Below are positions 1-32,359 of a stretch of DNA of 45,112 bases, one piece after another. The translations under genes and the position numbers were made by a program. Location: assembly GCA_002269645.1 (NCBI GenBank), contig NIVC01000937.1, positions 1-45,112 of the forward strand. The letters are read 5' to 3'. The notes below the pieces were generated by a model, which saw only the letters and a list, made by a program, of their open reading frames with translations, had not been told where the DNA came from and made no database searches. The stretch's first letter is position 1. Each line of letters starts with the position of its first letter. Source of the DNA: Macrostomum lignano. Lineage: Eukaryota.

Positions 1-64
1 AGAATTCTGATTGAAATCTGTTTGCCAATAAGCTCTGGTTTGCAGCCGCTAGAGATATGATCAC

Positions 65-1031
<967 letters not shown>

Positions 1032-12100: not shown

Positions 12101-15100
12101 TGTCCAAAGCCCCTGCAAACCAACTAATTCATAGTTCCAGACAGCCTGAAGTAACAGAGTGAGCAAGTCGACGCGGTTGACGATTGTCTCAATGTAGAAG
12201 ATCAAGCATGGCTCCTGAAACGTATCAATCCCACAGGTGCTCAGCCGTGGTCAGATTCAACGGTGGGGCCGTTTCGCAGATGGCGCCGGAGCGAAGGTGC
12301 GCTTCGCCAAGGCGGATCTCGACAGTTTCGTGTCTGACGTCACTCTGGTCGCGTTCGGGTTCGACCGTAGTGGAGAAATTGTGGCCTCGGTCGTTAAGCA
12401 CAGCACCGCCCGTCTGGGCGGACAGGTAGGCTTACTCGAGTATTTCCTAGAAGTGAAAATTTAGTAGTCATGAATTTCTTGACCAAGGCTTGCAACGTAA
12501 CGGTACTCAATTCTACTCGTAGATCGAGCTGTCGTCGAACCTAACGGACAATCGGGGCGAGCCGCAGCAGGGCGCCGTCGTGTCGGTTCGGGCCGCGCCG
12601 GACTCGTTTGTGTTCCTCACGGGTATCGATGCGTCAGTGAACCTGCTAGCCACCGGGCAGGACATCCTGCAGAGCACCCTGACTGAGCAGTACAACTCGC
12701 GAATCAGCGGCTTGCGTTATTGGCCGAGGCCACAGAAGCTCACCACGGCAAGGATTCTACAGGTGAATGCCAAGGAGAACTTGCCTGCAGTGATAGAAGT
12801 AGAGCATCAAAATTCGAGAAAGAAAGTCTTTACGTGCTCGTATGCAAAAATTCCTTTCTTTCCAGGAGAACGGCTTGATCCTACTGAGCGATGCTTTCTA
12901 TTATGCTGGTAAGTGGAATGACGAATGGTGCAATGCAGTCTGTTTGACTATTGGCTCCTTGACGACATCAACTCACAGCGGAGACAAGGCTGTACTCCAT
13001 TGGAAAGTTGTCTCAACTAGACAGCTCTCCAATCTAGACACTCCACCGATTCTTGATAAAAATAGTGTGCTATTGCTGGTAGTTAACGAGATTTTTCATA
13101 ACCCCCAGCCGATGCTTATCTTCCAATCGTAGACGACAATTCCATGGACTACATGTACGGACAGGCGCGCAACCGAAAGCTGATGGGCGCATCAGCCGAA
13201 ATGGCGCCGGCACCGCCGATGGCAATTCGAGGCCAGGACAGCAGCGGTAGCGGCAAGACCCAGGTTCGAAAATTCTTCCCGGAGACCATGATATGGACGC
13301 TAGTGCAGGCAGAGTAAGTGCTGAATCCTCAATTTCGTATTTCGTATTTTCATAAACGTACTTATATTTTAATCAGTTTCCTATTTTCTTCGTAGCTCGG
13401 AAGGCCTGGCGAGACACTCGTTCGTCCTGCCAGACACGATCACCTCCTGGGACGTGACCGGCTTCGGCGTTGCAGTGGACGGTCCGTTTCAGACCATGGA
13501 CTCCGCCTTTAAACTGACCACCTTCAAGAACTTTTTCATCCGCCCAGTGCTGCCGTACTCGCTGGTTCGCGGGGAGAAGTTTCTGCTGAAGGTGCTCGCC
13601 TTTAACTACCGCGCCATTGCTGGCAGCGTTGAAGTCGCCGTGAATGTCACCCGGCCAGCCTTGCAGCTGCCATCGCAAACCGTGTCGCTGGAGGCAAACT
13701 CAGTTGGATTGGCTGTCTTTGAGCTGACACCGAGCAGCCTACCCAGCTTGGATGTCACCATTCGTGCCACCTGGACCGGAGAATCCTCTTCGGAAACGGA
13801 CGTTGTCGTGAAGTCGATCATTGTGATACCTGAGGGCAAGACAGTGTACCGTTCCCGTTCAGTGCTGCTCACCGCGCCAGCAAACAGTTCCAGTGACAGC
13901 GCCCAGCAGGAGATCACAGTGGAGTTCCCTCCAGAAGATTCGCCGGATCTGGTCGCCGGCTCTGAAGTGTTCAGTTACAGCGTCATTGGAGACGTCACCG
14001 GCCCGGCCATGCAGAACATCGGCGGTCTACTGCGCCTGCCAAGCGGCTGTGGCGAGCAGAATATGGTGAACTTCGCTCCCGCTGTGTTCATCTGGGAGTA
14101 TCTCACTGCAACTCGTCAGGACACTGACCCGGATGTAAGCAAGAAAGCTCTGCAGGTTATGAAGGTCGGCCTGCAGCGCCAACTTACATACAAACGCCTG
14201 GATGGCTCCTACAGCGCCTTCGGCCAGCAGGACGAAGCGGGCAGTGCGTGGCTTACCGCTTTTGTTCTCAGCATCTATTCAAAAGCGGCAGCCTTCATCA
14301 CGGTGGGATCGGACTCGCTGACAGGCCAGTCTGTGAGTTTCCTCCTTTCCAGGCAGAGCGTCAACGGACAGTTCTCTGAGCTGTCGGCTGCCCGGATTCT
14401 GGACCCAGGCCTCCAGGGCAGCTCCAGGTCCGCTTCGCATGGCCTGACCGCGTTCATCTGCATGTCCCTCATGGACGTGGAGGAGGCCGCGATCCGTTGG
14501 CCGAAGCTACAGTCGACAACCTGGAAAGACACTGACACCCGCGGTGCCATCACTAAGTGTCTCTGGTTTTTGAAATCCGCTTTCGAGAGCAGCCCGGCGG
14601 AGTTCAGCTCGTATGATGCGGCTCTGTCCGCCTACCTACTGCGACGGGCCCAGGCTTCGACGAGGTACCGACAGGCTTCGTTGGAGCGCGGTCTGCAGGC
14701 GCTGACAACAGCGCTGAGCGAAAAAGCCGAGACGGACTCCAACGGTGGCAAGTATTGGAGCACCTCGAACAGATGGGGCCGGCGTCGCGGCTCCGTGGAA
14801 GCCACAGGCTGGGCGCTGATTGGCTGCTCTATGAAGTCTGACGCCACTGAAGAGTGCCTGCAGATCCTGCGCTGGCTGAGCGACCAGCAAAACAGCCTGG
14901 GTGGCTTCAGCAGCAGCCAGGCAACTGTGGTGGGCATTCGGGCGATTGCCGCTTTCGCCACCAGCTCGGGCCTGACAGGCGGAGATGCCAGCGTGGCGCT
15001 GAATTGGGGAGACATTAGCTTTCTGAACATCATTGAGGACAGCAACCGACGTGTGCTTCAGCAGGTGCGCTAGTTTTCAAAAGGGGATTTCAACTTAGTC

Positions 15101-16491
15101 AAATGGTCCGACCAGTTATGGATTCCAATCAGTTTGGTCCGAATCCTTGCTTTAGGTTCCATTCCGGAGCTTTAAGTTGACATCCCCTTACGTTTATTTA
15201 GCGGCCGGCAGCTTCAGTTATGTACCGTGCCATCCTCTATCGGAATAACCGATTTATTGATAGTAATTGAAAATTGCACCCAATTTTTCAGTCCGATCTT
15301 TTGCGCGGCACCACCGCCCGAGTCGGTGAAGTCCAGGCTCGCCACACCGGCGAGGGCGCCGGCTTTGCCCTGGCTAAGCTCAGCTGGCAGTACAACATCC
15401 TAGATAGACAGCAGCTGACCGCTTCAGACTGGAAGAGCTCCAATGGTCTCAGCATCCGCCTGGGCTTGATGCCACCTAAGCTACCGCCAAAGAGTCAGCA
15501 TAGGCTGGCTGTCTGCGCCAAGGCCAACACCACCGTCTCTGGTGAGGGCATGCTCATACTTCGCGTGACGAACCCCAGCGGATACTCAGCCGGCCGACTG
15601 CCCGAGCCATCCAGCGTTGCCGGACTGAAGCGTGTAGAAGCCGGGTCACAGGAGGTCGTCATGTACTTTGACTATGTGAGTTGACTCGCTGCTGTTCGAT
15701 AAATTAGCGGAATGGGCGCCCGCGCCTTCCCGCTGTGTCCCCTCCGGGACAGCCCTGCAGCTAAGTTCGATAAATTCTTCATACGGCTGCTGTAACTCCT
15801 TAACCAGAGACCATTATTGGTCTGACACCATGATTAATGTTCTAGTCTGACACCACGACTGATGTTCTAGTCTGACACCATGATTGAGATTAGGTTACCT
15901 GTGATATTTGAGCGCACGTGACTGCCCAAAATAAGTTAAGATTCGAACTCACGATAGGTCAGGTCAGGACAGCGGTTTCTTCACCTGGTTTCATCAGCTG
16001 GTCTTAACAGCTAAGGACATTGTTTGTGGAGACATTTTTAAAGTTCTATATAACAATCAGTGCACAACCTTTTAGCGCACGCTCCTTTTCATGTACGCAT
16101 TACGTAGCACGCGATCTCTCATATCACCATCCTGACAAACTAGGCCCTGTAACAAATGAAAATGGGTATCTATGCGATTTTTTGCCTGGAAAATCTTTCA
16201 TAAATCAGAGCAAGAATTTTAACTCTTAAACAATTCCAGCTTCCTAACGATGGAGCATGTGTATCACTCCAATGGAGCCGCGACGTTCCGGTACTGAAGC
16301 TCAGCCCGCAGCAAATCAGCCTGCAGATGTACTACAACGCTGACCGCATTGTCAGCGCGTCGTACCTATCGCCGGAGCTTCAGGAGTTGACGCGTTGCAC
16401 GGCCTGCCCGGAGTGCCCGGATTGCAGCACTTTGAGCCCCGACACCGCCGAGGAGCCCGGCCAGCCGGCTTGGCTCAATTGGCTCGTCTGA
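9136..16491 (+). CDS. Thioester-containing protein (TEP; CD109/insect-TEP/alpha-2-macroglobulin family), about 1513 aa, 15 exons
   Basis: Exons 9136-9254, 9978-10206, 10300-10533, 10616-11132, 11207-11319, 11405-11608, 11680-11802, 11883-11927, 12237-12425, 12523-12762, 12866-12908, 13133-13313, 13396-15064, 15292-15675, 16240-16491 (4542 nt, phases consistent). Signal peptide MAPGRNLASLASCLLLLALLAA; TDKAIYKPGQ; YVLPKF; RKFFPET; LPDTITSW; thioester GCGEQNM at 14045-14059; AWLTAFV; LGGFSSSQAT; C-terminal CTACPECPDC. Confidence 0.93.
9770..9936 (-). mobile_element. tRNA-derived SINE in TEP intron 1
   Basis: Minus strand begins GTAGCCCAGTGG (A box) and has GGCTCGATTCC (B box). No full cloverleaf or CCA. 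3' boundary uncertain. Confidence 0.55.
15820..15890. repeat. Short 25-bp tandem repeat (about 3 copies) in TEP intron 14
   Basis: TCTGACACCA(T/C)GA..(A/G)ATGTTCTAG repeated. Confidence 0.8.
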
Positions 16492-17237: not shown

Positions 17238-17522
17238 ATGCATCTTAGACTTCTGCTCCGGTTGCTGCTGCTTGCTTCGGTTTCTTTGTCCAATTCCTAT
17301 TGCACGACTTCGGCGAAATTCCACAAAACTGTTGGATTGGATTGAGTGCGACCCGAGTTCACCAACATCGTGTCGGGTCTGTGCACTCAACTTTACTGCG
17401 GCATTGCCTGCGCTAGGAAGGACAAGTGTCAGGCCTTCTCAGTGCTGACAGCTGGAGCCTGTCAGTGCAAGCTGTTCCTGTTCGATGCGTGCAGTCACCG
17501 TGTGCAGTCTGTGTTTTATTGA
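17238..17522 (+). pseudogene. Truncated PAN/C-type-lectin paralogue (signal peptide + PAN only)
   Basis: MHLRLLLRLLLLASVSLSNSYCTTSAKFHKTVGLD*VRPEFTNIVSGLCTQLYCGIACARKDKCQAF...HRVQSVFY*. In-frame TGA at 17343-17345 replaces a Cys. About 17396-17513 is near-identical to the intact copies. Confidence 0.8.
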
Positions 17523-18501
17523 TCCCCACTTGCAAGTAAATTTCAAGGCGATTTACTGAATTTTAAAGAAACTTGAAAGCGTTTTGTTCGTTTCTACCTG
17601 ATGACATCCAACAGTTTATGAGCGTACTGTTCTCAAATCAGTCGCATACAAGTTTATCAAATCGATCACTACCATGCTAAACTAACTCTGTGTTAAATAA
17701 AGCTGAAGTCTGAATGAGTGCTAAGCTCACCAAATACTTTTGTTGCTGAAAATCTTTTTGGAGCTTTCCTGTAAAGGAGAAAAGCACCTGTTCAAGCTTG
17801 CTAGTTTCATTGCACAGGATGTAAGTTTCTAAGGTAACTAAGAGCTGTGTAAAGTTGTTCTCACGACAAAGGCGAGGGATTAAATTCAGAAAAAGGTTTT
17901 ATTGGAATAAGATGCATTTCTGTTAGCGCATATCTAAGACCTCAGGAACAGAGCAGCTCAACAGTAAACACATTTGGCTTAAGCCAACCGACCCCTGGTT
18001 CGATTCCGTGCGCAAACACTTTTATTCGGGACTTGTGTACTTAAATTGGGCCTACAGGATGTCATTCGATTCACACCCCTGAGGCCCAACCCCCAAGACA
18101 CAAGGAGTGTAACTGCCTGACAATAGGAAAATCTGCTACTGGAAGCAAATACTGATGGATTTCTGTCGAGATTTTAGTCTTGCTCAGTAGCCCAAAAGCT
18201 TTTTATTTGAACGATAGTATCTGCTATCTAAAGCAGCAAGTAGACTGAACTTGCAAACTGAACCTGTGCACACATTGATAGAATTCCGTGACGGAGAGAG
18301 CTGCAACTAGCATTAACCGTCACCCAAAAAACTGTTTGCGATGCAAAGATAAAAGCCAGTCCTGCTTGCCATGTTCATACCAAGTCGTTTTACCTAATCT
18401 GGGCGAAAAACTTGACTTCTCTACTTCGAAGGCCTTCAACATTTATAAACTACACAAGCACTTCAAAATCTTTTGCAAGTCAACTGCGGTGTACAATTCA
18501 G

Positions 18502-19317
18502 ATGAAGTTGCGCCTGTTACTAACTGTCCTGAGCAGTACAGCATCATTGCAGCTGTTTGCATGGCTTCAAATCTTTTGGGCATCGACAGTGCTATCCAAA
18601 TCCTGCAGCGAACCCAAGGTCGCATTCCACAAGACCACCGGTGTGGACTGCGTGCGACCCGAGTTTATCCACATCGTGCCGGGTCTGTGCACTGAACTCG
18701 ACTGCGGCATTGCCTGCGCTAGGAAGGACAAGTGTCAGGCCTTCTCAGTACTGACAGCTGGAGCCTGTCAGTACAAGCTGTTCCTGTTTGATGCGTGCAG
18801 TCACCGTGTGCAGTCTGTGCCGAGCTGCACTCATCAGGTGACTGTGTATGTGAGGTCTCTGCCCGGCGTACCTCCGGGTCGCCTGTGTCCGTCCGGATAC
18901 GAGCACACGAGACATGGCACCTCGTACAAGTTTGTCATGGATAAGACGGTCACCTGGAACGATGCTCTCCAAAGTTGCAGCGCCGAGGCTGGACTGTCGA
19001 AGTTCGCGGACGCAATCGACTCCGATGAATCGAGCTACCTACTGAGTCTGCAGCACATTGTCATTCCAGAAGCCTCATCACTAAATTTTTTCCTTGGTGG
19101 CAATCAGACTGCCGCGTTTACTCCGAAGTCGAACGGTTGGTTCTGGGTTGCCTGCAACAGCTCCATCAGCTCAAGCATGTGGTACACTGACCAGCCCAAC
19201 CACGGCTTTCCAATACAAGGATGCACTGGCCTTTATAAAAAGTACGCGACAGGATTGGATGACTTTTATTGCACCGAAGCAATCCAATATATTTGCGAAT
19301 GCCAGTCAGTATTCTGA
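18502..19317 (+). CDS. Secreted PAN/apple + C-type lectin domain protein (copy A), intronless, about 271 aa
   Basis: Hydrophobic N-terminus. PAN-like LDCGIACARKDKCQAFS...C. CTLD with CPSGY, TWNDALQSC, FFLGG, WFW, WYTDQPN, C...LDDFYC...YICE. Confidence 0.85.
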   Translation: MKLRLLLTVLSSTASLQLFAWLQIFWASTVLSKSCSEPKVAFHKTTGVDCVRPEFIHIVPGLCTELDCGIACARKDKCQAFSVLTAGACQYKLFLFDACSHRVQSVPSCTHQVTVYVRSLPGVPPGRLCPSGYEHTRHGTSYKFVMDKTVTWNDALQSCSAEAGLSKFADAIDSDESSYLLSLQHIVIPEASSLNFFLGGNQTAAFTPKSNGWFWVACNSSISSSMWYTDQPNHGFPIQGCTGLYKKYATGLDDFYCTEAIQYICECQSVF

Positions 19318-20084
19318 AGATCTCTGACCAATTAGTAGAATATTTGAGAGCGTAGACAAAAACCCACCGTTTGCAGACGAAATGTCGAGAATATTTTCAC
19401 ACCCACGCAAAAAAATGACAATTCCGAATTCCAAATTTTCCACCGGGGTTGAAGCGCGGGGCTTTGAAAAGTGACCAGAAAAGACTAAGTATTGATAGAC
19501 ATGTACAGGATATAAAAGAATATCAAAAATGTCTTGATATTTCGGCCTAGATTCCGTTAATGCAACACCTTTCATGTAGTCATTTTCGGCCTGTCCCGTG
19601 TGCCTTTCTGGTCGACATTCTCTTTCCCTGTCTAAGCTTTTTTCTAGCTATCTGATAGATGAATTTATTCAAGCAAAACAATACGATCTAAATATTCATG
19701 TATTTTGATGAATAATTCTAATTCTAATTCTATTCTATTTCCCGAAGTTCTTTTAGCGACTCTTAAGTGACACATAGGCAAGAAAAATATATGGCTTATA
19801 GCAACCAGATCCTGTTAACCCAGTGCAGCGCATTCTGGTAAGCCTGATGCAACCATTGTACCAGAACAAGCTGACTGTCAGAGACCGTCTCCAAGCAGGA
19901 CGAACGTCGTGTCTTGATGCTTGTTTTTTAGTGTTTTCTAGTCAGGATTTCGTTGTACTTCTTGATGTAAGTTTTCAATTTGGAACATCTACATTTCGAA
20001 GAAGCACAGAGGCTGAAGAATTTGTGAGTAGAGTAGTCGCAAGTTTTTCTACACATGTCTTAACTGTTTTACGCAAATACAGTG

Positions 20085-20365
20085 CTATCTAAGTTTGAGT
20101 AAGACATTTGATTAGGGAGACACAAACTCGGGCATGGACACATCTATATTACTAATACTAGATCGGTATTCCTCAGAAGATCAAAGTGAGTCGTCCGCTT
20201 AGAAACCAAAGATGATATAGTTTGGGAGCATCTAATCAGAGAATACACATACACATGTACGGTAAATTAGCCTGATTTCAACCTCAATTGAAAAGAATTG
20301 TCAGTGAACACAAAAATCTAATATTGAATGCCAACACGTTTCGTCTAACCGACGTCTTCAAGGTA
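20085..20365 (+). mobile_element. Degenerate Penelope-like (GIY-YIG) remnant with an adjacent hammerhead-like motif
   Basis: Frameshifted reading resembling V(Y)KFE(C)KT(C)D..I(G)ET and IVWEHL at about 20085-20250. Minus-strand TTGAAGA-C-GTC-GGTTA-GAC-GAAACGTGTT at about 20333-20362. Confidence 0.35.
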
Positions 20366-20591
20366 GGTTAAAAATTGCATTAGTTTAACATAACAAGCAA
20401 TGCTTGTAACGAAAATTCTCGATCATAACATACATTCCAAAAGGTCCAGTTGATATGTCGCGGGCAGTTCAGTAAATAAAAAACAACGTTTAACTAAGCA
20501 AGCTACAGTGTAAACGTTAGTCGTTAGTCGCTATTAGTCGAACAAGTTAGTCGTTGGTTGCACTGATTAAGTTTATCAACTGATCCTCATT

Positions 20592-22038
<1,447 letters not shown>

Positions 22039-23194
22039 TTCTTGGCTGCATTTCTGATTGAGATTTTAACAGTGCTTTATATACAATAACTTTTGCATCC
22101 AGCCCATTTAACTATTTAAGCACTGCTCAAATGTTTAACAAGGGCCAACAATCATCTACTTAACTCAAGCCGTCCATTCTTTGTGCCTGCTTGTGCCTGA
22201 ACCTGAAGATTTGTCGTGCAGCGCTCTGTGTGGCATTTTAAAAGCCATTTATCGAAAGATGATGAATGATGCTAGGAATGATTTGATTAACAAAAATGTA
22301 TGGCTGGCTAACGGAGAAAATACACTTTGGAATCTTAATTGTTTCCCAAGTTTATTCTGATAAAATTGCTTTCAAACAAAAATCACTGCAAGCGTGATTG
22401 ATGGTCTCATGGTCAGCTCGTAGCTCGAATTACTTCATCATGTCTGAAGTTTGATTCTCATAAACTGATGTGAAACTCTCTTATTCTATTTGAACGGAAA
22501 CTCAATTTTACACAAATTAATGCAGCTAATTATATTAAAACACCATTCGCAACGAAAATATATATTCTTCTGTTTGAGCATTATCAGCAAATTTCAATTT
22601 TGACGCTGAAAATATTGAGGCGCGCAAAAAAACAAAATTGCGTAATTTGATATAAAAGTATCGAAATGAGCCAATGCTGGACAAACTCCGCTTAAAAACA
22701 CTTCGAATTAAAGTCTGTAGAGTTTTTCGAGTAGTCAAATAGTGAAGAGTATAACAAAATTACCTGAAATCCACAACTTTCACTTTGTGGGCTTTGGGTA
22801 GCAAAGTGGCTATAGCTCCAGTGTTTTGCGCTTCAACATTCTGTATCCAACCAATACTGCTATTCCTGGCAGCGGTAAAAGCTCCCGCGACCTGTTTGAT
22901 GAGTATAAACCCAAACACAATATCCAGTGTTTTCCGGGTCAGATTGGAGACATCAGTATTAGCGATAGAAAATGGTTGCCATCCAAAGGTCGGCGTTTAG
23001 TTCCACCAACAATGTTTTGAGGGAAAACACCAAGAAACTGTAACATTTAAAAGTTTACATACAGTTTTTATGCAACTAATCGACGTAAATGATCAGCATC
23101 AGCAACAAAAAACAAAAAACAAAAGGTCAGGGTCTTAAGAAGTCAGGGTCACAAGGTTCGCAAAAGAAGGACGCACCGCCCACCGAATCCAGGG

Positions 23195-23594
23195 TGCCTA
23201 CAGCGTCAGCAGCAGCACCTGCACCGGCTGTGGGCAGTATGACTCGGCGCGGATTATGTAGCCTGTCAGCTGGAGTCGCCGGCGGTGTCATATGTCGATC
23301 CAGATCAACGACAAGAGCGAGTCACTATCGTACAACCCACAGGCAGGCCACGCTATCCGCATCGAGTCGTACTGCCCACAGCCGGTCCAGGAGGTGCTGC
23401 TGCTGACGCTGCAGGCATACCACGGGGCGGAGGACAGGTGCACACTCAAGGTTGGCTCGTACGTCGATTGCCAGCTGGCTCACAACTGCTGGATCCGGTC
23501 TGGGTCAGTGGTGGCGTGGCCTACGTTCGCGCCTAGATCCAGAGGCGTGTTCATGGACAACTCCTTACTACTAATTTCTAAGAGAACCGAGTGA
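23195..23594. other. Inverted pair of an unidentified coding module; the + arm continues as a roughly 100-aa ORF (23292-23594)
   Basis: Arm 23195-23254 (minus: IIRAESYCPQPVQVLLLTL*) and arm 23355-23417 (plus: AIRIESYCPQPVQEVLLLTLQ). Related copies at about 26405-26515 (-) and 32068-32135 (+). Confidence 0.7.
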
Positions 23595-24412
23595 AGCGTC
23601 CTTCCCTTGGTCCATGGGCGCGATTTATGACTTTTAAGACCTAAGTTGCATCTACGAACATAGTAGTTTTTTAAATTTTACAACTATAACAGCGATCGTA
23701 GGCCGCACCGTCTACTCATAATGGCAGTGATAGCATTTTTCATAGCGTCGTAGCTATGTCCGATTATAACTGACTAATTGCGGCTTGGTCAGGCCAGGCC
23801 CAACAATATTCAAGCTACCTACTAACATTGACGCGTGGGGTAGGGACAAAAGAATGGAAATATTATTTTAACATCTGCTTAGCTAGGTGGAGAGGCATTT
23901 GCCCCACAGATACAAAAAACGTAGCCCAAATCGATTTAGGCAGTCAACCGTGTCAGGCCCTTCGTTATCGCTTCAACTTTGTGAGCAGCCGCCTCACTCC
24001 CAGCTCCGCTCCCGCCTCCTGCCACAGACAGCAGCCTCATCCATCAAAAATGGTTAGGAAATAAGCGGCAAAGGGTCGGAATTAAGCTGGCTTTGCTATC
24101 CCCGCAATAAGGATTAATAAATAATTCATGGGATGGCGTGGGATCCAATTATCGGCGCCAATAGAAAAAAATCGATGATCCCTGGAGTGGTGGTCGGAAA
24201 ACACTCGAAACCATGCAGTTTTGTTTTTAGCCTACGTGCAGTACAATCTATTGAGTATAAAATTCTTGCAATGAAGCAGAATTTCAGCTCTAATTATAAT
24301 TTTTAGCCCAAACTCGCGGGAGTAGTTGAAACCAGGCAGCAATACTTCAATTGACTCAGTAGCAGTCTATATTACCTTTCAAATTCGAACAACTTCGCGC
24401 TATCTGCGCATC

Positions 24413-25177
24413 ATGGAATTCTATATGGTAGCTTTTGCTCTACTTCTGGAACTCTTCTCCGCTTCAGCGGTGCTCTCTGAGTCGTGCGAATCCAAGGTCG
24501 CATTCCACAAGACCACCGGCGTGGACTGCGTGCGACCCGAGTTCATCCACATCGTGCCGGGTCTGTGCACTGAACTCGACTGCGGCATTGCCTGCGCTAG
24601 GAAGGACAAGTGTCAGGCCTTCTCAGTGCTGACAGCTGGAGCCTGTCAGTGCAAGCTGTTCCTGTTCGATGCGTGCAGTCACCGTGTGCAGTCTGTGCCG
24701 AGCTGCACTCATCAGGTGACTGTGTATGTGAGGTCTCTGCCCGGCGTACCTCCGGGTCGCCTGTGTCCGTCCGGATACGAGCACACCAAATACGGCACCT
24801 CGTACAAGGGGAGCACAGAGATCGCCTTCTGGTCGACTGCCAATCAGACCTGCAGTGCGGAACCTGGTCTGTCCAAGTTCGCTGACGCAATCGACCTTGA
24901 CGAGGTGGAGTACCTCCACTCGTTGAAGCAGCAGATCGGACTTGGATTCAGTTACTTTCTCGGCGGCGCTGGGAATCCAGCAAACGTGCCCTCCAGTTGG
25001 TTTTGGACTGGCTGTAATTTGCCTATCAGCGCCTCAGTCTGGCATGCCGGTGAGCCGAACGGGCCTGCTGAGTTATTCTGCGCCAACCTCTTCAGTGGAT
25101 TTTCTTCGGGAGGCATAGACGACTTCGAATGCACTGGAATGCATCGCTACTTTTGCGAGTGCCAGTCAGTGTTTTAG
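24413..25177 (+). CDS. Secreted PAN/apple + C-type lectin domain protein (copy B), intronless, 254 aa
   Basis: Signal peptide MEFYMVAFALLLELFSASA. Same PAN as copy A. CTLD with FWSTANQTC, YFLGG, WFW, WHAGEPN, C...IDDFEC...YFCE. Confidence 0.87.
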   Translation: MEFYMVAFALLLELFSASAVLSESCESKVAFHKTTGVDCVRPEFIHIVPGLCTELDCGIACARKDKCQAFSVLTAGACQCKLFLFDACSHRVQSVPSCTHQVTVYVRSLPGVPPGRLCPSGYEHTKYGTSYKGSTEIAFWSTANQTCSAEPGLSKFADAIDLDEVEYLHSLKQQIGLGFSYFLGGAGNPANVPSSWFWTGCNLPISASVWHAGEPNGPAELFCANLFSGFSSGGIDDFECTGMHRYFCECQSVF

Positions 25178-26404
25178 TCTGCAAATAATTGAACGAATAG
25201 CCGAATATTTATGTATGAACACCAAGGCTTGGATTTGCAGGAAACTTTTTAACTCGACTTTTCTACCGCAGTCTCTAGTTATCCTAACCATTTTTTTTAT
25301 TTTCTCTCACCATCTAGTGGAAAGTAATAGTGTGCGTCTTTTGCAGGTAGATGTGCATTGGTTATTTTCGAATTTTCTTTTCTACATCTAAAAGTACATA
25401 CCAGGTATTATACATCTTTCATGAAATATGTTTAGAGATATATAACTTCCTTGAAATTGTAACAGAAGGAACAATTTTTTGTTTGCAGCAATGCGAACTT
25501 TCTAGAAATGTTATGTCACAGACACAGACAATGGAACACTTTGCTGGTTTTTTAACAACCTTTAAATATATACTTGAAAAATGGCTTCTATCTTTCGAAG
25601 CAGCCGAACGCTGTTAGCGAGACAAGTTAAAACCATAAAAGTGTACTCGTACTCATTAAATCTACATGCAGCTTGAATAACTCACCCCCCCTCCCCTTAC
25701 TCGGATATCGGACAACAAGCTATTATTAAGCTCCAACATGCGGGTGGGAAGAGCAGCAACGCCCAGTCTAGTTAAGCTAAGATTAAGATTAAGTTACTCT
25801 ATGTATGATCTATAGGGGACGATTTTATTAACAAAAATGGTATTGCTTTGTTTATCTATCAAAGTAACTATACCATTCCTTACATTAGTAATTTACATTC
25901 ACGAAGCCGTAAATAGCTTTAGTATTTCGGTAAAATGCTCAAATTCATGCCAGGATAAATATAGTGAAAAAAATCTTTTTTTCCTGCACCAGATAATGAA
26001 CGAATGTGTCGTAACAGGCCCAATGCATTTTTCACTAAGAATAGTACAGCGTTATGATGATAACTAAAAACCACCTAGGTTCGAGTGCTTAACCTAATGC
26101 ATGCTGTGTGGCATGCTCACCTCCGAGTGAGTCCTTTACTTGACACTCTGTCGCCGTGGAGGTCTAGTCTGTTCATACAAGCCAGCCTGTTGCGCCGCCA
26201 GCGACTTCAGTAGGCAGGCCACATCATACGTACGCTCGTAGATTCGGTCGGCAAGTGCATGGGACCTACAAGAGCAACAACAACAAAATCTGCTACCCCG
26301 CATGCAAAGTCACAGTTAGAGCCGGGCGCGTCAGATGGCGCGCCGCAGAGTCTGGGAGCGAACCAAGTCCGCTTCGTTGGCTGTGTCGGGCGCCCCAGCG
26401 TCGC

Positions 26405-26515
26405 ACAGCAGGCAGTCCACGTATCGACGGTTTCGGGCCTGACCCCGCCTGAACGGGCCATGCAAGGTGAGCAGCAGGACGTCCTGAACAGGTTGGGGGC
26501 TACGTTTGAGCCTAT
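26405..26515 (-). pseudogene. Third, most diverged copy of the unidentified PQPVQxVLLLT module
   Basis: Minus frame HRLKRSPQPVQDVLLLTLHGPF...RYVDCLL aligns with the 23355 copy (..CPQPVQEVLLLTLQ...SYVDCQL). Apparent frameshift just upstream. Confidence 0.55.
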
Positions 26516-27180
26516 GCTATGCACCTCAACCTGTGAAGCGTGTTATGTCACAGTTTTCTGGTAATGTCCGTTTTGACGGATTGTCGTTTTTGTTGTTGAT
26601 GTTGGGATTCTCGTTCTAATTATGATGAAAGAATGAAAGCTGTGGAAAATATGATGGCTGTAGCTAGCAATCCAGCTATAAATGCTGTATATTATTGTAC
26701 TCATTTAAATCCATCAAGCTGTCAACGCTTTTGTTAAAACTTGAAGCTCAACACTTACCCCGCATTTCGCGTTCTTATTCATTGTTTTCAACAGTTTAGA
26801 ATAACACTCTATCAATTTTAATCCAGACCATTGCTTATCCTCATAGTATTGAAAAAAATCCTGAAAGAAAACCAGCTTTTTAGCAGAAAAGTAATTTTGC
26901 TTTTTGTATCTACCCTCGCTGTTAGGTCAATAACTATCGGAACACAAGTGAACAATAAGCATCTAGGATCTCACTCAGTATCTCAGTTGTCAGAAGGCAA
27001 CTGAGTTCGAGACATGAATGTCGAAATATTCGCAGTTGGCCATAGACTAAAAGTTCAAGCCTGTAAAATCTGACAAAATTATACTCATATTGCGCCTCTG
27101 TTTGCAAAAGCAGTTAGAAATCAAGAAGACAAGAAAAAGAATACTTAACGCTCTCAGACTTGTTGCATCCAAACACAAAA

Positions 27181-28545
27181 ATGCGCGAGTGCATCTCAAT
27201 TCACGTCGGTCAGACGGGAGTGCAGATAGGCAACGCCTGTTGGGAGCTCTTCTGTCTTGAGCACAGCATCCAGCCGGACGGTCTGATGTTGCCTGGTAGA
27301 GAAAAATCCGACGATTCTCAATCGTCTTTCTTCTCAGAGACCTCGTCTGGACGATACGTGCCTCGCACAGTGTTTGTGGATTTGGAGCCAACCGTCATTG
27401 ATGAAGTCCGATGCGGCACCTACAGGCAGATGTTTCACCCGGAGCAGCTCATCTCGGGCAAAGAGGATGCGGCCAACAACTACGCCCGGGGACACTACAC
27501 AGTCGGCAAGGAGGTGATCGGACAAGTGCGAGAGGTGATCAACCGTCTAGCCGAGAACTGTTCAGGCCTGCAGGGCTTCCTTGTGTACCACTCCTTTGGC
27601 GGCGGTACCGGCTCCGGATTCACGTCGTTGCTGATGGACCGCCTGGCGTCGGAGTACGGCAAGCGAGCCAAGCTGGAAATCGCCGTCTACCCGTCGCCGC
27701 AAGTGTGCACCGCTGTGGTGGAGCCATTCAACGCGATTCTGTGCACACACGGAACACTGAGGCACTCCGACTGCGGAATGATAGTGGACAATGAAGCCAT
27801 CTACGACATTTGCCGAAGAAACTTAGACGTCGAGAGGCCAACTTATACAAACTTGAACAGGCTGATTAGCCAAGTCGTATCCTCCATAACCGCGTCGCTT
27901 CGGTTTGACGGCTCAGTAAATGTGGACATCAGCGAGTTTCAAACAAATCTGGTTCCTTATCCAAAGATTCACTTCCCTCTTGCTACTTATTCACCAATTC
28001 TTTCAGCAGAGAAGGCGCATCACGAGCAGCTCACAGTTAAAGAGATTACTAACTCGTGCTTTGAAGCTAGCAGTCAGATGGTGAAGTGCGACCCTCGGCA
28101 CGGAAAGTACATGGCCTGCTGTCTTCTGTACCGCGGCGACGTCTCCTCGAAAGACATCAACGAAGCGATTCAGAAAATCAAGACTAAGCGCGAAATACAG
28201 TTTGTCGACTGGTGCCCCACAGGCTTCAAGGTGGGCATGAACTATCAGCCGCCAACGACGGTACCTGGCGGTGATCTGGCAAAAGTTCCACGCGCAGTCT
28301 GCATGCTGAGCAACACCACCGCCATCGCGGAGGCCTGGGATCGGCTGGCGTACAAGTTCGACCTGTTGTATTCCAAGCGGGCGTTTGTACACTGGTACGT
28401 AGGGGAAGGCATGGAGGAGGGCGAGTTCGCCGAGGCCCGGGAAGATCTTGGCGCCATGCAGAAGGACTACGAAGAGGTCGGAGTAGACAGCGTCGAGGGA
28501 GAAGAGGAGGAGGTCGAGGAAATGGACAAAGTCGGCGATGACTGA
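27181..28545 (+). CDS. TUBA: Alpha-tubulin, divergent, intronless, 454 aa
   Basis: [69 protein letters not shown], acidic tail. Confidence 0.98.
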
Positions 28546-29199
28546 AGCGGTGCTTCCATCTTCGTAAATATCTCTATGCATACTTTGAACTGTATTTTCC
28601 AGCAATTATCTAATTAATTATCATGCAGACCGTTATGCTTATTTTTATTCCAAAATTTGCGTAGCGATGATGCAAGAAGCTGGCAGATCATTTGCTACGG
28701 CGAATCCGTATTTGTATTGGTTGGCCATAAATGAGGCCCACACTTGCATTCATGAATTAGTTTCGGTAAAGTTTTGTTACTGCATTTTGACAACTACAAA
28801 GGAATTTTATTTGCAAGTCAATAAACCGGTATCATATTAATTTATTCTCGCACACCTTTTTTGTCTTCGTATCTGTCATTTCGACCGGCTCTCCAAGCAC
28901 AGCGGAAGGCGAAGTTTGAACAAAATCTTGAGTGCTTATTGTAATGAAAGAAATTTTTAAAGTCACTTTCATCTGGCAGGCAGAAAACGAGACAGGTTAC
29001 GCCCAAGGACCACTATCAGTATATCCTTGGATAGCAGGGTCCTTGGTCCTTGGTTACGCCCTTGATAACTGCACGAAGTTTGATTGAAGTTTTGTTAATA
29101 TTTGTCTTGTAGCAAACAGCTGAAAATGCAGTGTGTTTTTTTCAGCGGGAAAAATACTTAAATGTACAAACGCTCGTTTGACTATAGAGTAGACCAACA

Positions 29200-29475
29200 T
29201 GGTGTCTGTGCACTCTTCGATAATGTAGCATTGTCTGCGCTAGGAAGGACAAGTGTCAGGCCTTCTCAGTGCTGACAGCTGGAGCCTGTCAGTGCAAGCT
29301 GTTCCTGTTCGATGCGTGCAGTCACCGTGTGCAGTCTGTGCCGAGCTGCACTCATCAGGTGACTGTGTATGTGAGGTCTCTGCCCGGCGTACCTCCGGCT
29401 CGCCTGTGTCCGTCCGGATGCGAGAACGCGAGATACGGCTCATTGTACGTGTATATTCAAGCTTGTCAAGGATGA
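29200..29475 (+). pseudogene. Internal fragment of the PAN/C-type-lectin cassette
   Basis: About 29237-29420 is near-identical to copies A and B. It then degenerates (GCENARYGSLYVYIQACQG*). The 5' flank is a decayed version of the 17.3 kb copy. No signal peptide. Confidence 0.8.
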
Positions 29476-29836
29476 GCTGATCGCATAGGATGTCTAATAG
29501 TATGGCTTACTTGTTGTGGCTTCAAAGTGTGCTTACAGCGTACTCATTAGTTGACTTGACTACTAAAAAGAATAAACTTAAAGCCAAGGAAAATTGTTTC
29601 AGTTCGCTAGAATAAGCCAAAGCGTGACCAACTGAATCCAGTATTGCTATAGTATTTCCGCACTCTAATTTTGCATACATGGGCTGGCTTTTCGACTCGA
29701 TGTGGCCACTCAGAAGGCTGCACCAGAGTCCATATAATTGCTTCCTGAGCTCCGAGAGCAGATAAATTCTAACTGAGATAGGTCGTTTGAAACTAAAGGG
29801 AAATTTTGCAGTCATTTTTGTTAAAATTGTCGCTGC

Positions 29837-30706
29837 ATGGCTGACACTCTGGTGAAAGTTGGTCTCGCCTGTTTACTATTTTCGTTGGTCCTCGTTGCCG
29901 TTCTTTTGCCAGCATGCTGCTTGATGCGTCGCAGGCGCCGGGCTCAGTCGCAGCAGCATTTGCAGCAGTCCGATGAGCAGCAGCGGTCGGTCTGGCCAGG
30001 CCGCGTGTCTGTGCTGGCAGCCGGGGCGCTGCTATCTGTTGGCCTGCTGGACATGTTCCCGGATGCGGCCGAAGAGCTCAAACCGATGGGCAACGCCAGC
30101 CGGACACTGGCGCACAGTCTAGCCCTGGCCGGACTGTCTCTCGTGCTGGTTGTTGATCGTCTTGCTTCGGCGCGCTTCAGCCGCTCTGCTCTGCTGGCCA
30201 CGGCGCTGTCCGTTCATTCTCTGTTCGAAGGCGTAGCGATGGGGGTCGCACCGCAGCCAACCAAACTGGCCGCCTACTTTGTAGCCATCGCGCTGCACAA
30301 ACTGGTGGTGGCCGCCAGCCTTGGCATCGAGCTGGCCACCTCCAGCGTACCCATCCGCAACCTGCTGGCCTGCGCGCTCGGCTTTGCGCTCGCCAGTCCC
30401 GTTGGCATAACTCTCGGACTGCTCCTGACGACCAGCCTCGAGTCCCGACCGCTCTCTGCCGGACTGGCTAGCGGAGTTCTTCAGTCCTTGGCTAGCGGCA
30501 CTTTTCTCTATGTGGCTCTGTTTGAAATCCTGCCGCGAGAGTTTGGCTATTGCTTTGAGTCTGCCGAGTCGGATGGACCCGATGGCACTGAGCAGGGCAG
30601 CGCCGAGCCGGAAGGCCACCGACACGGCAAACTGCTGTTCCTGGCACTCGGGTTTGTTGCCGTTTCATCCTACGAGCTGATGGAGCGGGCGATACTGACG
30701 CCGTAA
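29837..30706 (+). CDS. ZIP (SLC39, ZIP1/2/3-like) divalent metal transporter, intronless, 289 aa
   Basis: AAGALLSVGLLDMFP, TM4 ALSVHSLFEG, TM5 IALHKL, ASPVGI, ASGTFLYVALFEILP. AATAAA at 30776-30781. Confidence 0.92.
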   Translation: MADTLVKVGLACLLFSLVLVAVLLPACCLMRRRRRAQSQQHLQQSDEQQRSVWPGRVSVLAAGALLSVGLLDMFPDAAEELKPMGNASRTLAHSLALAGLSLVLVVDRLASARFSRSALLATALSVHSLFEGVAMGVAPQPTKLAAYFVAIALHKLVVAASLGIELATSSVPIRNLLACALGFALASPVGITLGLLLTTSLESRPLSAGLASGVLQSLASGTFLYVALFEILPREFGYCFESAESDGPDGTEQGSAEPEGHRHGKLLFLALGFVAVSSYELMERAILTP

Positions 30707-31125
30707 CTTCTCTAGTAGTTTACGAGATTTTTTCGAGCGTACAAAAGATTTCGATTTCATCCCAGTTTGTATTGAAATAAACTCTCAATTGAGTTGATAA
30801 TCTTTTATGCTGGTCAATACGATTAGTTACTAAGTTTTGTGGTAATTGTAACATTATTTTAACTGCCCTGCACTCTTGGGTTATGTTGTGATGTATTTGC
30901 CTCTTTTCTTTGAGAGTTATAAAATTTTTGCAAGCACTGTACTAAGTCGAATAATTTAATTTTTAATTAAACAATTTTTGAAATCGGATCAACTGAAGCA
31001 TAAAATATAAGGAAACCAATTACAGTTTTATTCTAACATAGGACAGAGCACCAGATAAACTCTTCAAATACACAAGTCCGCAAGTACACTATGCGAGAGT
31101 CCTAATGCCCGCGGCAGCTCAGCAC

Positions 31126-31638
31126 TCAGGGGAAAGCCTCGTGGTCGAACACGTACTCTCCGATTCCGGTGCCCACCCTATTGAGTTGCGTGATGAAGGC
31201 GGAGATCTTGGCAATCGCGTCAACCTGCTCGCCGAGGAACTCTCCCTCTAGGAAGTCGGTGAGATGCGCGTCATCGTGTTTCGAGGTGACCTTGTGCAGG
31301 TCCAACAGGCTCTGGTTGACGTCCCTCTCCAGCTGCAGCGCGTCCTCCATCGCCTCCAGCATGGAGCCCCAAGCGTGCTTCTTCGGCCTGTTCACGTTGT
31401 CCAACACGACGGAGCCGCCTCGCTCGTTGATCAGCTTCATCAGCTTCTCGGCGTGCTCTCGCTCATCCGAGGACTTCTTGGCGAAGTAGGCTGAGATGCC
31501 GGGCAGGGCGACATCGTCGCGACTAAAGTAAAAGCTCATGCTCTGGTAGGTATACGACGCGAACAGCTCCATGTTCACTTGCTTGTTCAGCGCCGCCTCG
31601 CTCTCCTGGTGAAAGTTCTGTCTGATTCGGCTGCTCAT
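31126..31638 (-). CDS. Cytosolic ferritin, heavy-chain type, intronless, 170 aa
   Basis: RIRQNFHQESEAALNKQVNMELFASYTY, RDDVALPG, EREHAEKLM, LERDVNQSL, DFLEGEFLGEQV. Ferroxidase ligands appear present (Asp at the H-chain E61 position). Minus-strand AATAAA at 31027-31032. Confidence 0.97.
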   Translation of the reverse strand: MSSRIRQNFHQESEAALNKQVNMELFASYTYQSMSFYFSRDDVALPGISAYFAKKSSDEREHAEKLMKLINERGGSVVLDNVNRPKKHAWGSMLEAMEDALQLERDVNQSLLDLHKVTSKHDDAHLTDFLEGEFLGEQVDAIAKISAFITQLNRVGTGIGEYVFDHEAFP

Positions 31639-32067
31639 GACTGCCGGCTCTGCCGGGCGAGACTGGGTTTTGATTGACTTTCTTGCGCTGTCTGCAAACA
31701 GCTGTCGAATTTATGCGCTCGGCTACGCAATGATCAGTCGTATTCGAGCCGAGCTGAGGCGCTTAGAATTATCATCACCAAGGCCAATGAAAAAAGTTAA
31801 TCTCAGAAAGATGCTCAAACTGATCACAACTTGAGATGGGATGTGCTGAACAATAGAAGCCCTGGGTTATTATCTGTCATTACATTCATTATCGATTAGT
31901 TCAACTAGTTCACTCATGCCTCACCGAAATAGTACATTTCCACAGCTTTCTTCGAAGATCTGATGTAGACTTGCGGTCGACATGGCCCACTGGGGACTCA
32001 GTCTAACCGCCGAGCCGGCCTAGTCCGCCCATGAGACCTCAAGCTAGCCGGCCAACTAGCCAGCCAA

Positions 32068-32135
32068 ATCATCCGCGCCGAGTCCTACTGTCCGCAGCCG
32101 GTGCAGAATGTGCTGCTGCTGACGATGCGCAGGCA
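32068..32135 (+). other. Fourth copy of the unidentified module
   Basis: Frame IIRAESYCPQPVQNVLLLTMRRHPG, bounded by stop codons. Lies upstream of and divergent from ferritin. Confidence 0.7.
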
Positions 32136-32359
32136 CCCTGGCGCAAACTCGGCGTTTCGTCGAGCTGCCTGCTGGCTGACGCGGGCGCCCGGATTCGGTC
32201 GGTGACACGGCCTGTGTTTGCGCCCTAGCCAAGAGGCGCGCTGTGACTCTGACTATGTTTTATAAGTCTAACTGACAGCTTATTTTGTTGTTATTATTGT
32301 TGTTGTTATTTGAGTGTTTTAGAGAAGCGAAAATTCAAAACAACCAGTTCGGGTGAATT

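What the first reader, a model, noticed from the sequence alone, without database searches (positions are those of the whole stretch)
17238..29475. PAN + C-type-lectin cassette family with a homogenised 'constant' module and divergent recognition domains
Seen: copies A (18502-19317) and B (24413-25177) differ at only 5 positions over about 295 nt (18615-18908 vs 24493-24786, manual comparison, all transitions). Their signal peptides and CTLDs are highly diverged; similarity collapses right after GYEHT..GTSYK. Two broken copies (17.2 kb, 29.2 kb) keep a near-identical internal tract (about 120 and 185 nt) with sharp edges and divergent or decayed flanks. Simple duplication would give uniform divergence. 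Inference: ongoing ectopic gene conversion or cassette shuffling keeps a constant PAN scaffold while the sugar-binding domain diversifies, and the fragments could be donors or recipients. This would be a constant/variable lectin system loosely analogous to snail FREPs or urchin Sp185/333.
Basis: partly seen in the sequence, partly recalled or inferred. Interest (0 to 1): 0.78.

Follow-up and report, generated by a model that had tools for sequence, protein, structure and literature searches.

The report
Gene-converted core in flatworm lectin genes
A small family of secreted PAN + C-type-lectin genes in the flatworm Macrostomum lignano shares a 220-320-base stretch kept almost identical, most likely by copying between gene copies (gene conversion), while the sugar-binding part stays anciently different; this is a clean but ordinary case of concerted evolution, not a new kind of immune diversification system.

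Summary
A (18502-19317) and B (24413-25177) differ at 5 of 294 nt, or 10 of 323 nt over the full tract. The rest of the two ORFs is 40-70% identical. Fragments F1 and F2 carry the same tract, with diverged or unrelated flanks.

The window is the whole contig NIVC01000937.1 of Macrostomum lignano. I recovered two more loci from the same assembly:
- A 98%-identical second copy of this locus, carrying A', B' and F2'.
- An unrelated locus with an inverted gene pair, C and D.

In all copies a core (A 18712-18930) differs at 3-7 of about 219 sites (dS 0.02-0.10). In the main part of the CTLD, dS is saturated. Informative sites support AB|CD in the 5' half (37:0:0) and AD|BC in the CTLD. The dead fragments contain 119- and 190-nt blocks 100% identical to B. 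Three variants are swapped between A and B in the two locus copies.

Best explanation: recurrent ectopic gene conversion bounded by heterology (about 0.8). PAN and CTLD identities are supported by profile and fold searches. The sugar motifs differ (QPN, EPN, QPD). The proposed analogy to FREPs or Sp185/333 has no support. Verdict: new member of a known kind, moderate interest.

The parts
17239..17513 (+). F1: dead 5' fragment. It has its own leader (MHLRLLL...) and the N-terminal part of PAN, then is cut off. TGC>TGA at the first PAN cysteine makes an in-frame stop. No homology continues after 17513.
   Evidence: tblastn; in-register alignments; counts.
17395..17513 (+). Block of F1 that is 119/119 identical to B 24579-24697. 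Upstream homologous sequence is only 86%, then 47% identical.
   Evidence: site table.
18502..19317 (+). Gene A: intronless ORF of 271 aa. It encodes a signal peptide, a PAN/apple-like domain (about aa 35-118), a linker and a CTLD (about aa 129-268) with a QPN motif. The window copy has Tyr91 where every other copy has Cys.
   Evidence: ORF; AlphaFold model, pLDDT 87.3; Foldseek CTLD hits; profile searches.
18608..18930 (+). A-side of the A/B homogenised tract: 323 nt with 10 differences from B. Its 3' part, 18712-18930, is the core shared at 97-99% with C and D at another locus.
24413..25177 (+). Gene B: intronless ORF of 254 aa with the same architecture, an unrelated leader, and a CTLD with an EPN motif.
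24486..24808 (+). B-side of the A/B tract. 24590-24808 is the family-wide core.
29204..29458 (+). F2: dead internal fragment with no start codon, an in-frame TAA and no CTLD body. 29235-29424 is 188/190 identical to B; its counterpart F2' on the second locus copy is 190/190. Flanks are 50-70% identical, then unrelated.
18976..19020 (+). Secondary conserved island in the CTLD (GLSKFADAID). It is 84% identical to B 24851-24895. The longer C/D tract ends inside this island.
   Evidence: the repeat finder D18.
19292..19310 (+). Conserved 3' end (CECQSVF-stop), 18/19 identical to B 25152-25170.

Best explanation
A, B, F1 and F2 are old paralogues of a Macrostomum lignano family of small secreted PAN/apple + C-type-lectin proteins. 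So are C and D at a second locus, and at least one further gene known only as a protein (P0002).

An internal stretch of these genes is repeatedly overwritten from one copy to another by non-allelic (ectopic) gene conversion, that is, homologous-recombination repair that uses a paralogue as template. Conversion needs sequence identity at its ends. So tracts stop where the copies are already too different, and they end in conserved islands such as the start of the mature peptide, the core, the GLSKFADAID patch and CECQSVF. This confines homogenisation to a core of about 220 nt in all copies, with longer local tracts within each neighbouring pair: 323 nt for A/B and 553 nt for C/D.

The C-terminal two-thirds of the CTLD carries the EPN, QPN or QPD sugar-binding motif. 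It lies outside the tracts and keeps ancient, saturated divergence.

What is shown and what is inferred:
- Shown: the mosaic, the dS contrast, the incongruent phylogenetic signal, the perfect blocks inside dead fragments, and the variants swapped between paralogues in two copies of the locus.
- Inferred: the molecular mechanism, the self-limiting role of heterology, and that the proteins are functional secreted lectins with different sugar preferences.
For: 1. Source. The window is contig NIVC01000937.1 of M. lignano GCA_002269645.1.

2. dS by segment for A, B, C and D. In the core every pair gives 0.02-0.10. In the main body of the CTLD every pair gives 1.4 to saturated. In the N-terminal half of PAN, A-B gives 0.10 and C-D 0.00, but between loci it is about 0.4. 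In the leader, C-D gives 0.05 and A-B is saturated.

3. Best low-divergence blocks, inside versus outside:
- A/B: 9/315 vs 204/423.
- C/D: 8/462 vs 130/276.
- All four inter-locus pairs: 3-7 of about 219 vs about 200 of about 520.
- The longest-concordant-run permutation gives p <= 1e-4 for A/B and for C/D.

4. Quartet-informative sites. Codon columns 0-159 give AB|CD 37, AC|BD 0, AD|BC 0. Columns 160-239 give AD|BC 18, AC|BD 6, AB|CD 5. dN in the CTLD body is lowest for A-D (0.44) and B-C (0.36), against 0.52-0.58 for the other pairs.

5. Dead fragments. F1 has a block 119/119 identical to B, and F2' a block 190/190 identical to B. Their flanks are 47-86% identical. Selection on a protein cannot explain this.

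6. Second copy of the locus (L002). It is 97.9% identical over 16.7 kb and has the same mosaic, with intact A' and B'. At three sites within 54 nt (18613, 18642, 18666) A = B' and A' = B.

7. The C/D inverted pair shows the same phenomenon with different tract ends: 553 nt at 97.6% identity.

8. P0002 has the 60-aa core identical to B but a third CTLD type with QPD. P0103 shares that CTLD type but has its own PAN.
Against: - No conversion event was observed directly.
- The swap of three variants between A and B is reciprocal. That needs two conversions or an unusual resolution, and it could in principle be a consensus or polishing error in a repeat-rich neopolyploid assembly.
- The 5' edges of the perfect blocks cluster within about 13 nt in F1, F2 and the C/D-versus-A/B comparison (B 24579-24592). 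The 3' edge at GTSYK is shared by five gene pairs. Random tract ends would not do that unless heterology fixes them, and that role of heterology is an inference.
- GC and GC3 are not clearly raised in the core, so there is no signature of GC-biased conversion.
- Only four intact genes and three fragments could be studied at the DNA level.
Confidence: 0.8

Rival explanations
1. Module shuffling rather than patch conversion. Under this reading the genes are chimeras made by unequal crossing-over or non-allelic homologous recombination inside the conserved core, which acts as a recombination handle. Leaders/PAN halves and CTLD bodies would be re-assorted, and F1 and F2 would be leftovers of such breaks.
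For: - Every gene has a different combination of leader type, PAN-N type and CTLD type around the same core.
- C and D share everything 5' of GLSKFADA, including 83 nt upstream of the ATG, but have different CTLD bodies.
- F1 ends and F2 begins inside the tract, and they overlap by about 115 nt.
- Block edges are shared among copies.
Against: - A and B differ on both sides of the tract: leader 35% identical, CTLD 40-70%. So at least this pair needs an internal patch, which a single crossover cannot give.
- The fragments have diverged homologous sequence on both sides of their perfect block. That is the footprint of a patch written into an old copy.
- Crossing-over between direct repeats would delete or duplicate the 5.9-kb interval, yet the two locus copies are collinear.
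Confidence: 0.12
2. Nucleotide-level functional constraint. Under this reading the core is conserved because the DNA or RNA itself is functional, for example as an RNA structure, a small-RNA target, an overlapping reading frame or an internal regulatory element.
For: - The same roughly 200 nt are near-identical in every copy seen, including at synonymous sites and across loci.
- Alternative-frame and antisense ORFs of 75-98 aa are open across the core in B and F2.
Against: - The predicted RNA structure of the core is not better than shuffles (z = -1.3).
- There is no Rfam match.
- The alternative ORFs lack ATG starts and are expected in a 60% GC stretch.
- Constraint does not explain the longer pair-specific tracts. 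A/B extend 5' and C/D extend both ways, including 5' UTR, each at 97-98% identity while 71% identical to the other pair.
- Constraint does not explain the swapped variants either.
Confidence: 0.05
3. Assembly artefact. Under this reading the near-identical tracts are products of collapsed or chimeric assembly, or of polishing, in a genome with three subgenome copies.
For: - Mlig_3_7 is fragmented and contains mis-represented paralogous blocks (PMC10733133, read).
- The second locus copy has a 457-N gap exactly where F1 would be.
- The reciprocal three-site swap is the kind of pattern variant mis-assignment could produce.
Against: - The mosaic occurs on three separate contigs, with intact ORFs and copy-specific private SNPs.
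- The tracts are only about 0.3 kb, far shorter than the PacBio reads used, so unique flanks anchor them.
- UniRef models from the independent ML2 assembly (P0002, P0103) carry the same core.
Confidence: 0.03

Closest known systems
Partial (mosaic) ectopic gene conversion, i.e. concerted evolution, in clustered gene families. Examples from my own knowledge, not checked here: human gamma-globin genes, RHD/RHCE, CYP21A2/CYP21A1P, SIGLEC11/SIGLEC16.
   Same: - An internal tract, synonymous sites included, is homogenised between old paralogues with sharp edges.
- Pseudogene copies take part.
- Tract ends sit where homology runs out.
- Different gene segments give incongruent trees.
   Different: - The same core is shared by copies at two unlinked contigs as well as by neighbours.
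- The host is a neopolyploid flatworm with about three subgenome copies of most loci, so inter-homeologue templates are also available.
- The gene family is unannotated in the NCBI annotation of the assembly.
Invertebrate C-type lectin expansions whose paralogues differ in EPN/QPD-type carbohydrate motifs (general CTLD literature; my own knowledge).
   Same: - Small secreted proteins with one CTLD.
- Paralogues differ at the Ca2+/sugar motif: QPN in A, EPN in B and C, QPD in D, P0002 and P0103.
- The genes are clustered, next to other recognition-type genes (a TEP and a fibrinogen-related gene).
   Different: - An N-terminal PAN/apple module is fused to the CTLD.
- The WND motif is replaced by L/I-D-D.
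- No binding or expression data exist.
Biomphalaria FREPs and sea-urchin Sp185/333
   Same: - A multigene family of secreted putative recognition proteins.
- Recombination or conversion among copies produces mosaics.
- A fibrinogen-related gene sits inside the cluster.
   Different: - FREPs are IgSF + fibrinogen proteins with reported somatic diversification.
- Sp185/333 genes are element mosaics without known domains.
- Here the architecture is PAN + CTLD and the conserved part is homogenised.
- The divergent part consists of old germline lineages, and there is no evidence of somatic or hypervariable change.

Membership tests
C-type lectin-like domain (CTLD) proteins | Sequence match to the CTLD family model | tested here: inconclusive
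   Pfam Lectin_C does not hit A or B on their own, even at E <= 10. It does hit 10 of 19 aligned family members (best E 3e-15). A profile of the family hits solved CTLDs, including mannose receptor 2, CLEC4D/E and selectins, at E 3e-17 to 1e-7.
C-type lectin-like domain (CTLD) proteins | CTLD fold | tested here: met
   The AlphaFold2 model of A built with the family alignment has pLDDT 87.3 and pTM 0.80. Foldseek top hits are langerin, mincle, CEL-I and lithostathine CRDs, with target TM 0.72-0.81 and probability 1.00.
C-type lectin-like domain (CTLD) proteins | Ca2+-dependent sugar-binding motifs (EPN or QPD, plus WND) | tested here: inconclusive
   The family motif aligns to the DQPDN/EPNN motifs of mannose receptor 2 in the profile alignment. 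In the family alignments B and C have EPN there, D, P0002 and P0103 have QPD, and A has QPN. The WND position reads LDD or IDD. Binding was not tested.
PAN/apple domain | Sequence and cysteine pattern of the PAN module | tested here: met
   A profile of the N-terminal domain (A3) finds only PAN/apple proteins at the top: Eimeria MIC5 at E 2.6e-4, HGF N domain at 0.004, then plasminogen, TgMIC4 and factor XI. Pfam PAN_1 hits 5 of 19 relatives (best E 3.1e-6). UniRef calls P0001 an Apple domain-containing protein. The support is modest; A and B alone give no Pfam hit.
PAN/apple domain | Fold: a helix packed on a five-stranded sheet | tested here: inconclusive
   Model residues 42-118 show five strands and one helix at pLDDT about 90-96.
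Ectopic gene conversion / concerted evolution | Mosaic identity that includes synonymous sites | tested here: met
   dS is 0.02-0.10 in the core and 1.4 to saturated in the CTLD body. Block chi-square values are 98-234.
Ectopic gene conversion / concerted evolution | Phylogenetic incongruence between segments | tested here: met
   Quartet-informative sites give 37:0:0 for AB|CD in the 5' part. In the CTLD body AD|BC has 18 sites against 6 and 5 for the alternatives.
Ectopic gene conversion / concerted evolution | Tract also present in non-functional copies with diverged flanks | tested here: met
   F1 has a block 119/119 and F2' a block 190/190 identical to B. Flanks are 47-86% identical, and both fragments carry stop codons.
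Ectopic gene conversion / concerted evolution | Variants shared or exchanged between paralogues across haplotypes or homeologues | tested here: met
   At three sites (18613, 18642, 18666) A = B' and A' = B. This depends on the accuracy of the assembly.
Ectopic gene conversion / concerted evolution | Direct observation of conversion events | not testable with these tools
   This needs pedigrees, single-molecule reads or population samples.
FREP- or Sp185/333-type diversified immune effectors | Family architecture (IgSF + FBG; or Sp185/333 element pattern) | tested here: not met
   The architecture here is signal peptide + PAN + CTLD.
FREP- or Sp185/333-type diversified immune effectors | Somatic or exceptional allelic diversification of the variable part | not testable with these tools
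   The only relevant datum is that outside the tract, A/A' differ at 8 of 493 nt and B/B' at 2 of 442 nt. That is no more than the genome-wide 1.1-2.2% between subgenome copies (PMC10733133).

The most novel reading that the evidence does not exclude
The roughly 220-nt core could be more than a passive island of conversion. It could be a recombination handle that the M. lignano germ line (or soma) uses to re-assort leader/PAN modules with CTLD bodies of different sugar specificity, with truncated copies such as F1 and F2 serving as donor cassettes. That would make it a lectin counterpart of cassette-based variation systems.

The evidence does not exclude this:
- Every gene seen has a different module combination around the same core.
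- Block edges recur among copies.
- The fragments break inside the core.
Probability: 0.06. Interest if true: 0.7.

Novelty: new member of a known kind. Interest (0 to 1): 0.36.

Why it matters
- It documents a previously unannotated PAN + CTLD lectin family in a regeneration and neopolyploidy model flatworm. The NCBI annotation of the contigs read here calls only a partial CTLD for C (P0010) and nothing for the five other intact genes A, B, A', B' and D.
- It gives a compact, well-resolved example of heterology-bounded concerted evolution that also acts on pseudogene fragments and across loci.
- Practically, the near-identical core will confound short-read mapping, RNAi or in situ probe design, and gene models for these genes.
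- The swapped variants between the two locus copies suggest that exchange has continued since the recent genome duplication. That bears on how paralogues and homeologues interact in a young polyploid.
- It does not open a new class of immune diversification.

Tried and rejected
- The search for homologous proteins gave nothing for A. It also gave nothing for C, although C contains the database protein P0010 exactly. A third query failed. That tool was therefore uninformative here. The exhaustive HMMER search found the family.
- Exact-protein look-ups of A, B, ferritin, ZIP and P0002 found nothing. No transcript evidence for expression was obtained.
- The first structure prediction, with only A and B in the alignment, was useless (pLDDT 29.6).
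- 'The core is an ancestral exon' was rejected. The only intron found in the family (P0012, after aa 149, which corresponds to about aa 157 of A) lies 14 codons 3' of the A/B tract edge and 5' of the C/D edge.
- 'The core is an RNA element' was rejected: fold z = -1.3 and no Rfam or tRNA hits in the window.
- 'L001 is a duplicate of the window locus' was rejected: none of the four window proteins queried (both TEP ORFs, the fibrinogen-related ORF and its PAN-like ORF) has a tblastn match in L001.
- A GC-biased-conversion signature was looked for and is not evident.
- The run-length (GENECONV-like) test is not significant for inter-locus pairs. The core is invariant in all four genes, so it contributes few polymorphic sites. 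The block chi-square test was used for those pairs instead.

Full report
**1. What is in the sequence**

The window contains four direct copies of one tract (repeat finder family D11; pairwise blastn).

Two copies lie inside intact intronless ORFs: A (18502-19317, 271 aa) and B (24413-25177, 254 aa). A and B are 96.9% identical over 323 nt (18608-18930 vs 24486-24808). There are 5 differences, all transitions, in the inner 294 nt. Codon-aligned windows show 96-100% identity inside the tract and 39-71% in the leader and the rest of the coding sequence. The drop comes immediately after ...GYEHTxxGTSYK. Outside the ORFs the two gene regions share nothing detectable.

The other two copies are dead fragments.
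- F1 (17239-17513) has its own leader (MHLRLLL...), a TGC>TGA stop at the first PAN cysteine, and ends abruptly.
- F2 (29204-29458) has no start codon, an in-frame TAA and no CTLD body.
- Each fragment has a perfect or near-perfect block: F1 17395-17513 is 119/119 identical to B, and F2 29235-29424 is 188/190.
- In each, the block is embedded in homologous sequence that is much more diverged. For F1 this is 8/57 then 18/34 differences upstream. For F2 it is 10/31 and 15/34 on the two sides. Beyond that the sequence is unrelated.

**2. What the genes are**

Pfam finds nothing in A or B themselves, and the word-index homology search found nothing. An exhaustive HMMER search with the A+B alignment found 101 relatives. 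The close ones are all from Macrostomum lignano.

A 19-sequence family alignment (A2) gave the following.
- Its profile hits solved CTLDs at E 3e-17 to 1e-7.
- Pfam Lectin_C hits 10 of 19 members and PAN_1 hits 5 of 19.
- The AlphaFold2 model of A has pLDDT 87.3 and pTM 0.80. Its best structural matches are langerin, mincle, CEL-I and lithostathine CRDs.

A profile of the N-terminal domain alone (A3) hits only PAN/apple proteins at the top: Eimeria MIC5 at E 2.6e-4, HGF N domain, plasminogen, TgMIC4 and factor XI.

The label 'signal peptide + PAN + CTLD' is therefore justified. The CTLD part is strongly supported and the PAN part modestly.

At the position aligned to the EPN/QPD sugar motif:
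- A has QPN.
- B and C have EPN.
- D, P0002 and P0103 have QPD.

The WND position reads L/I-D-D.

**3. Where the window comes from, and two more loci**

The tubulin gene at 27181-28545 gave exact hits on two contigs of GCA_002269645.1 (Mlig_3_7). One is NIVC01000937.1, which is 45,112 bp long and is the window itself (L003 is 100% identical to 17181-38545). The other is NIVC01001639.1 (L002).

L002 is collinear with window 17589-34231 at 97.9% identity. That is the divergence reported between the roughly three subgenome copies of this inbred neopolyploid: 2.2% genome-wide and 1.1% in coding sequence (PMC10733133). L002 carries intact A' and B' and F2'. Its first 457 bases are N, exactly where F1 would be.

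A look-up of P0010 (PAA72784.1) gave L001 on NIVC01001061.1. L001 holds two more full-length genes in divergent orientation: C (+, 9554-10312, 252 aa) and D (-, 1823-2587, 254 aa). They form a 553-nt inverted repeat at 97.6% identity. The repeat runs from 83 nt upstream of the ATG to codon ~157.

**4.

A codon alignment of A, B, C and D was analysed by segment.

| Segment | dS by pair |
|---|---|
| Leader | C-D 0.05; A-B and all inter-locus pairs 1.4 to saturated |
| PAN N-half | A-B 0.10; C-D 0.00; between loci about 0.4 |
| Core (columns 67-136) | every pair 0.02-0.10 |
| CTLD start | C-D 0.00; all others 0.6-1.4 |
| CTLD body | every pair 1.4 to saturated |

The best low-divergence blocks, given as differences inside versus outside, are:
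- A/B, codon columns 38-143: 9/315 vs 204/423.
- C/D, columns 4-170: 8/462 vs 130/276.
- All four inter-locus pairs, columns 70/71-143: 3-7 of about 219 vs about 200 of about 520.

Quartet-informative sites give the following.
- Columns 0-159: AB|CD 37, the two alternatives 0.
- Columns 160-239: AD|BC 18, against 6 and 5 for the alternatives.
- dN in the CTLD body is lowest for A-D (0.44) and B-C (0.36). The other pairs give 0.52-0.58.

So each locus holds one 'A/D-type' and one 'B/C-type' CTLD. These lineages are older than the separation of the two loci. The 5' parts, in contrast, group by locus, and the core groups everything together.

At the protein level the picture is the same. P0002 has 60 residues identical to B's core, joined to a third CTLD type. 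P0103 has that third CTLD type with its own PAN, and only GACQCKLFLFDACSHRVQSVP is shared.

**5. Evidence that the exchange is recent**

The site table for nine copies shows only seven variable sites across B 24592-24781 (190 nt). Each is private to one copy or to the C/D pair.

Between the two copies of the locus, A and A' differ at 15 of 816 nt and B and B' at 7 of 765 nt. At three of these sites, all within 54 nt (18613, 18642, 18666), A = B' and A' = B. This cannot arise by point mutation without three recurrences. It implies transfer between A and B after the two locus copies separated, or else a consensus error in the assembly.

The homogenised blocks differ by 1-3%. That is the same order as the subgenome divergence, so the last homogenisation is about as young as the polyploidisation.

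**6. Mechanism**

The most economical reading is recurrent non-allelic gene conversion.

Perfect blocks inside stop-containing fragments rule out protein-level selection as the cause of the identity. The diverged homologous sequence on both sides of those blocks rules out fresh partial duplication.

A and B differ on both sides of the tract, so at least that pair needs an internal patch rather than a single crossover.

Tract ends fall in islands conserved in all copies. The C/D tract ends inside the GLSKFADAID island. That island is 84% identical between A and B (D18). The other islands are the start of the mature peptide and the 3' CECQSVF-stop, which is 18/19 identical. This is what homology-dependent resolution would give. 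I infer, but did not show, that heterology in the CTLD body and in the leader now confines conversion to the core, and that this makes the edges self-sustaining.

Whether selection for distinct sugar specificities also keeps the CTLD bodies apart cannot be decided, because dS there is saturated.

**7. Rivals**

- Crossover-based module shuffling through the core is partly compatible, and I give it about 0.12. It is the basis of the 'most novel reading'.
- A nucleotide-level functional element is unlikely. The fold z-score is -1.3, there is no Rfam hit, and it cannot explain the pair-specific extensions.
- Assembly artefact is unlikely for the mosaic itself. It appears on three contigs with private SNPs and intact ORFs, and the same core appears in models from the independent ML2 assembly. 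It remains a caveat for the three-site swap and for F1, because of the N-gap in L002.

**8. Comparison with known systems and verdict**

This works like the classic cases of partial gene conversion in clustered families, and it meets every criterion of that class that sequence data can test.

It is not a member of, and shows no tested resemblance to, FREP or Sp185/333 diversification. The architecture differs. The 'variable' part consists of old germline lineages. Outside the tract, divergence between the two locus copies is ordinary: 8 of 493 nt for A/A' and 2 of 442 nt for B/B'.

The context is suggestive of recognition functions but proves nothing. A TEP/A2M gene lies at 13454-15684, and a PAN-like + fibrinogen-related gene lies on the minus strand between A and B.

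Verdict:
- Gene conversion is supported.
- The constant/variable immune-system analogy is not supported.
- Novelty: a new member of a known kind, in a gene family that NCBI's annotation of this assembly leaves largely uncalled.

Noticed in passing
window 20592-22038 (minus strand) and 13454-15684 (plus strand): A PAN-like ORF and a Fibrinogen_C ORF (E 2.3e-16) lie on the minus strand between A and B, and the PAN-like ORF reads through a (CTGT)n microsatellite. Upstream of F1 are ORFs with the A2M and TED_complement domains (a thioester protein). Together with the lectins this looks like a cluster of recognition-type genes.
   Followed up: partly
window 18773: The window copy of A has TAC (Tyr91) where A', B, B', C, D, F1, F2 and F2' all have TGC (Cys), a cysteine nearly invariant across the family alignment. 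Two silent changes private to A lie within 40 nt of it (18750, 18789). This copy may be functionally impaired.
   Followed up: partly
L002 1-457 (NIVC01001639.1): The second copy of the locus has a run of 457 N exactly where F1 would lie, so the presence and state of F1' are unknown. The gap may itself be caused by the repeated tract.
   Followed up: no
window 27181-28545: An intronless, rather divergent alpha-tubulin gene sits between B and F2. The identical 454-aa protein is encoded on two contigs of the assembly. NCBI's annotation calls this gene and a BTB gene but none of the lectin genes.
   Followed up: partly
window 23207-23273, 23336-23412 and 32052-32128: A repeat of about 70 nt occurs as a local inverted pair (83% complementary, 78 nt apart), with a third copy 8.7 kb away (77-78%). 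Its nature is unknown.
   Followed up: no
window 1-1100, 2470-3910, 4283-4935, 41050-41770, 43685-44450; 33000-35000: There are long tandem arrays with units of 8, 39, 41, 43/36, 20 and 26 nt near both contig ends, and a very AT-rich stretch (GC 0.27) at 33-35 kb.
   Followed up: no
L004 6001-7386 (NIVC01001858.1): The distant family member P0012 has one intron of about 600 nt after aa 149, inside the CTLD just before the conserved Cys. Genes A to D have no intron. The position matches neither tract edge.
   Followed up: yes
L001 1823-2587 and 9554-10312: Genes C and D are full-length ORFs, but the NCBI annotation calls only a 103-aa partial CTLD for C (PAA72784.1) and nothing for D. UniRef models of relatives from the older assembly are fused to neighbouring genes: P0002 to a Cys-loop-receptor-like sequence, and P0003 and P0103 to a CUB domain-containing protein.
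   Followed up: partly
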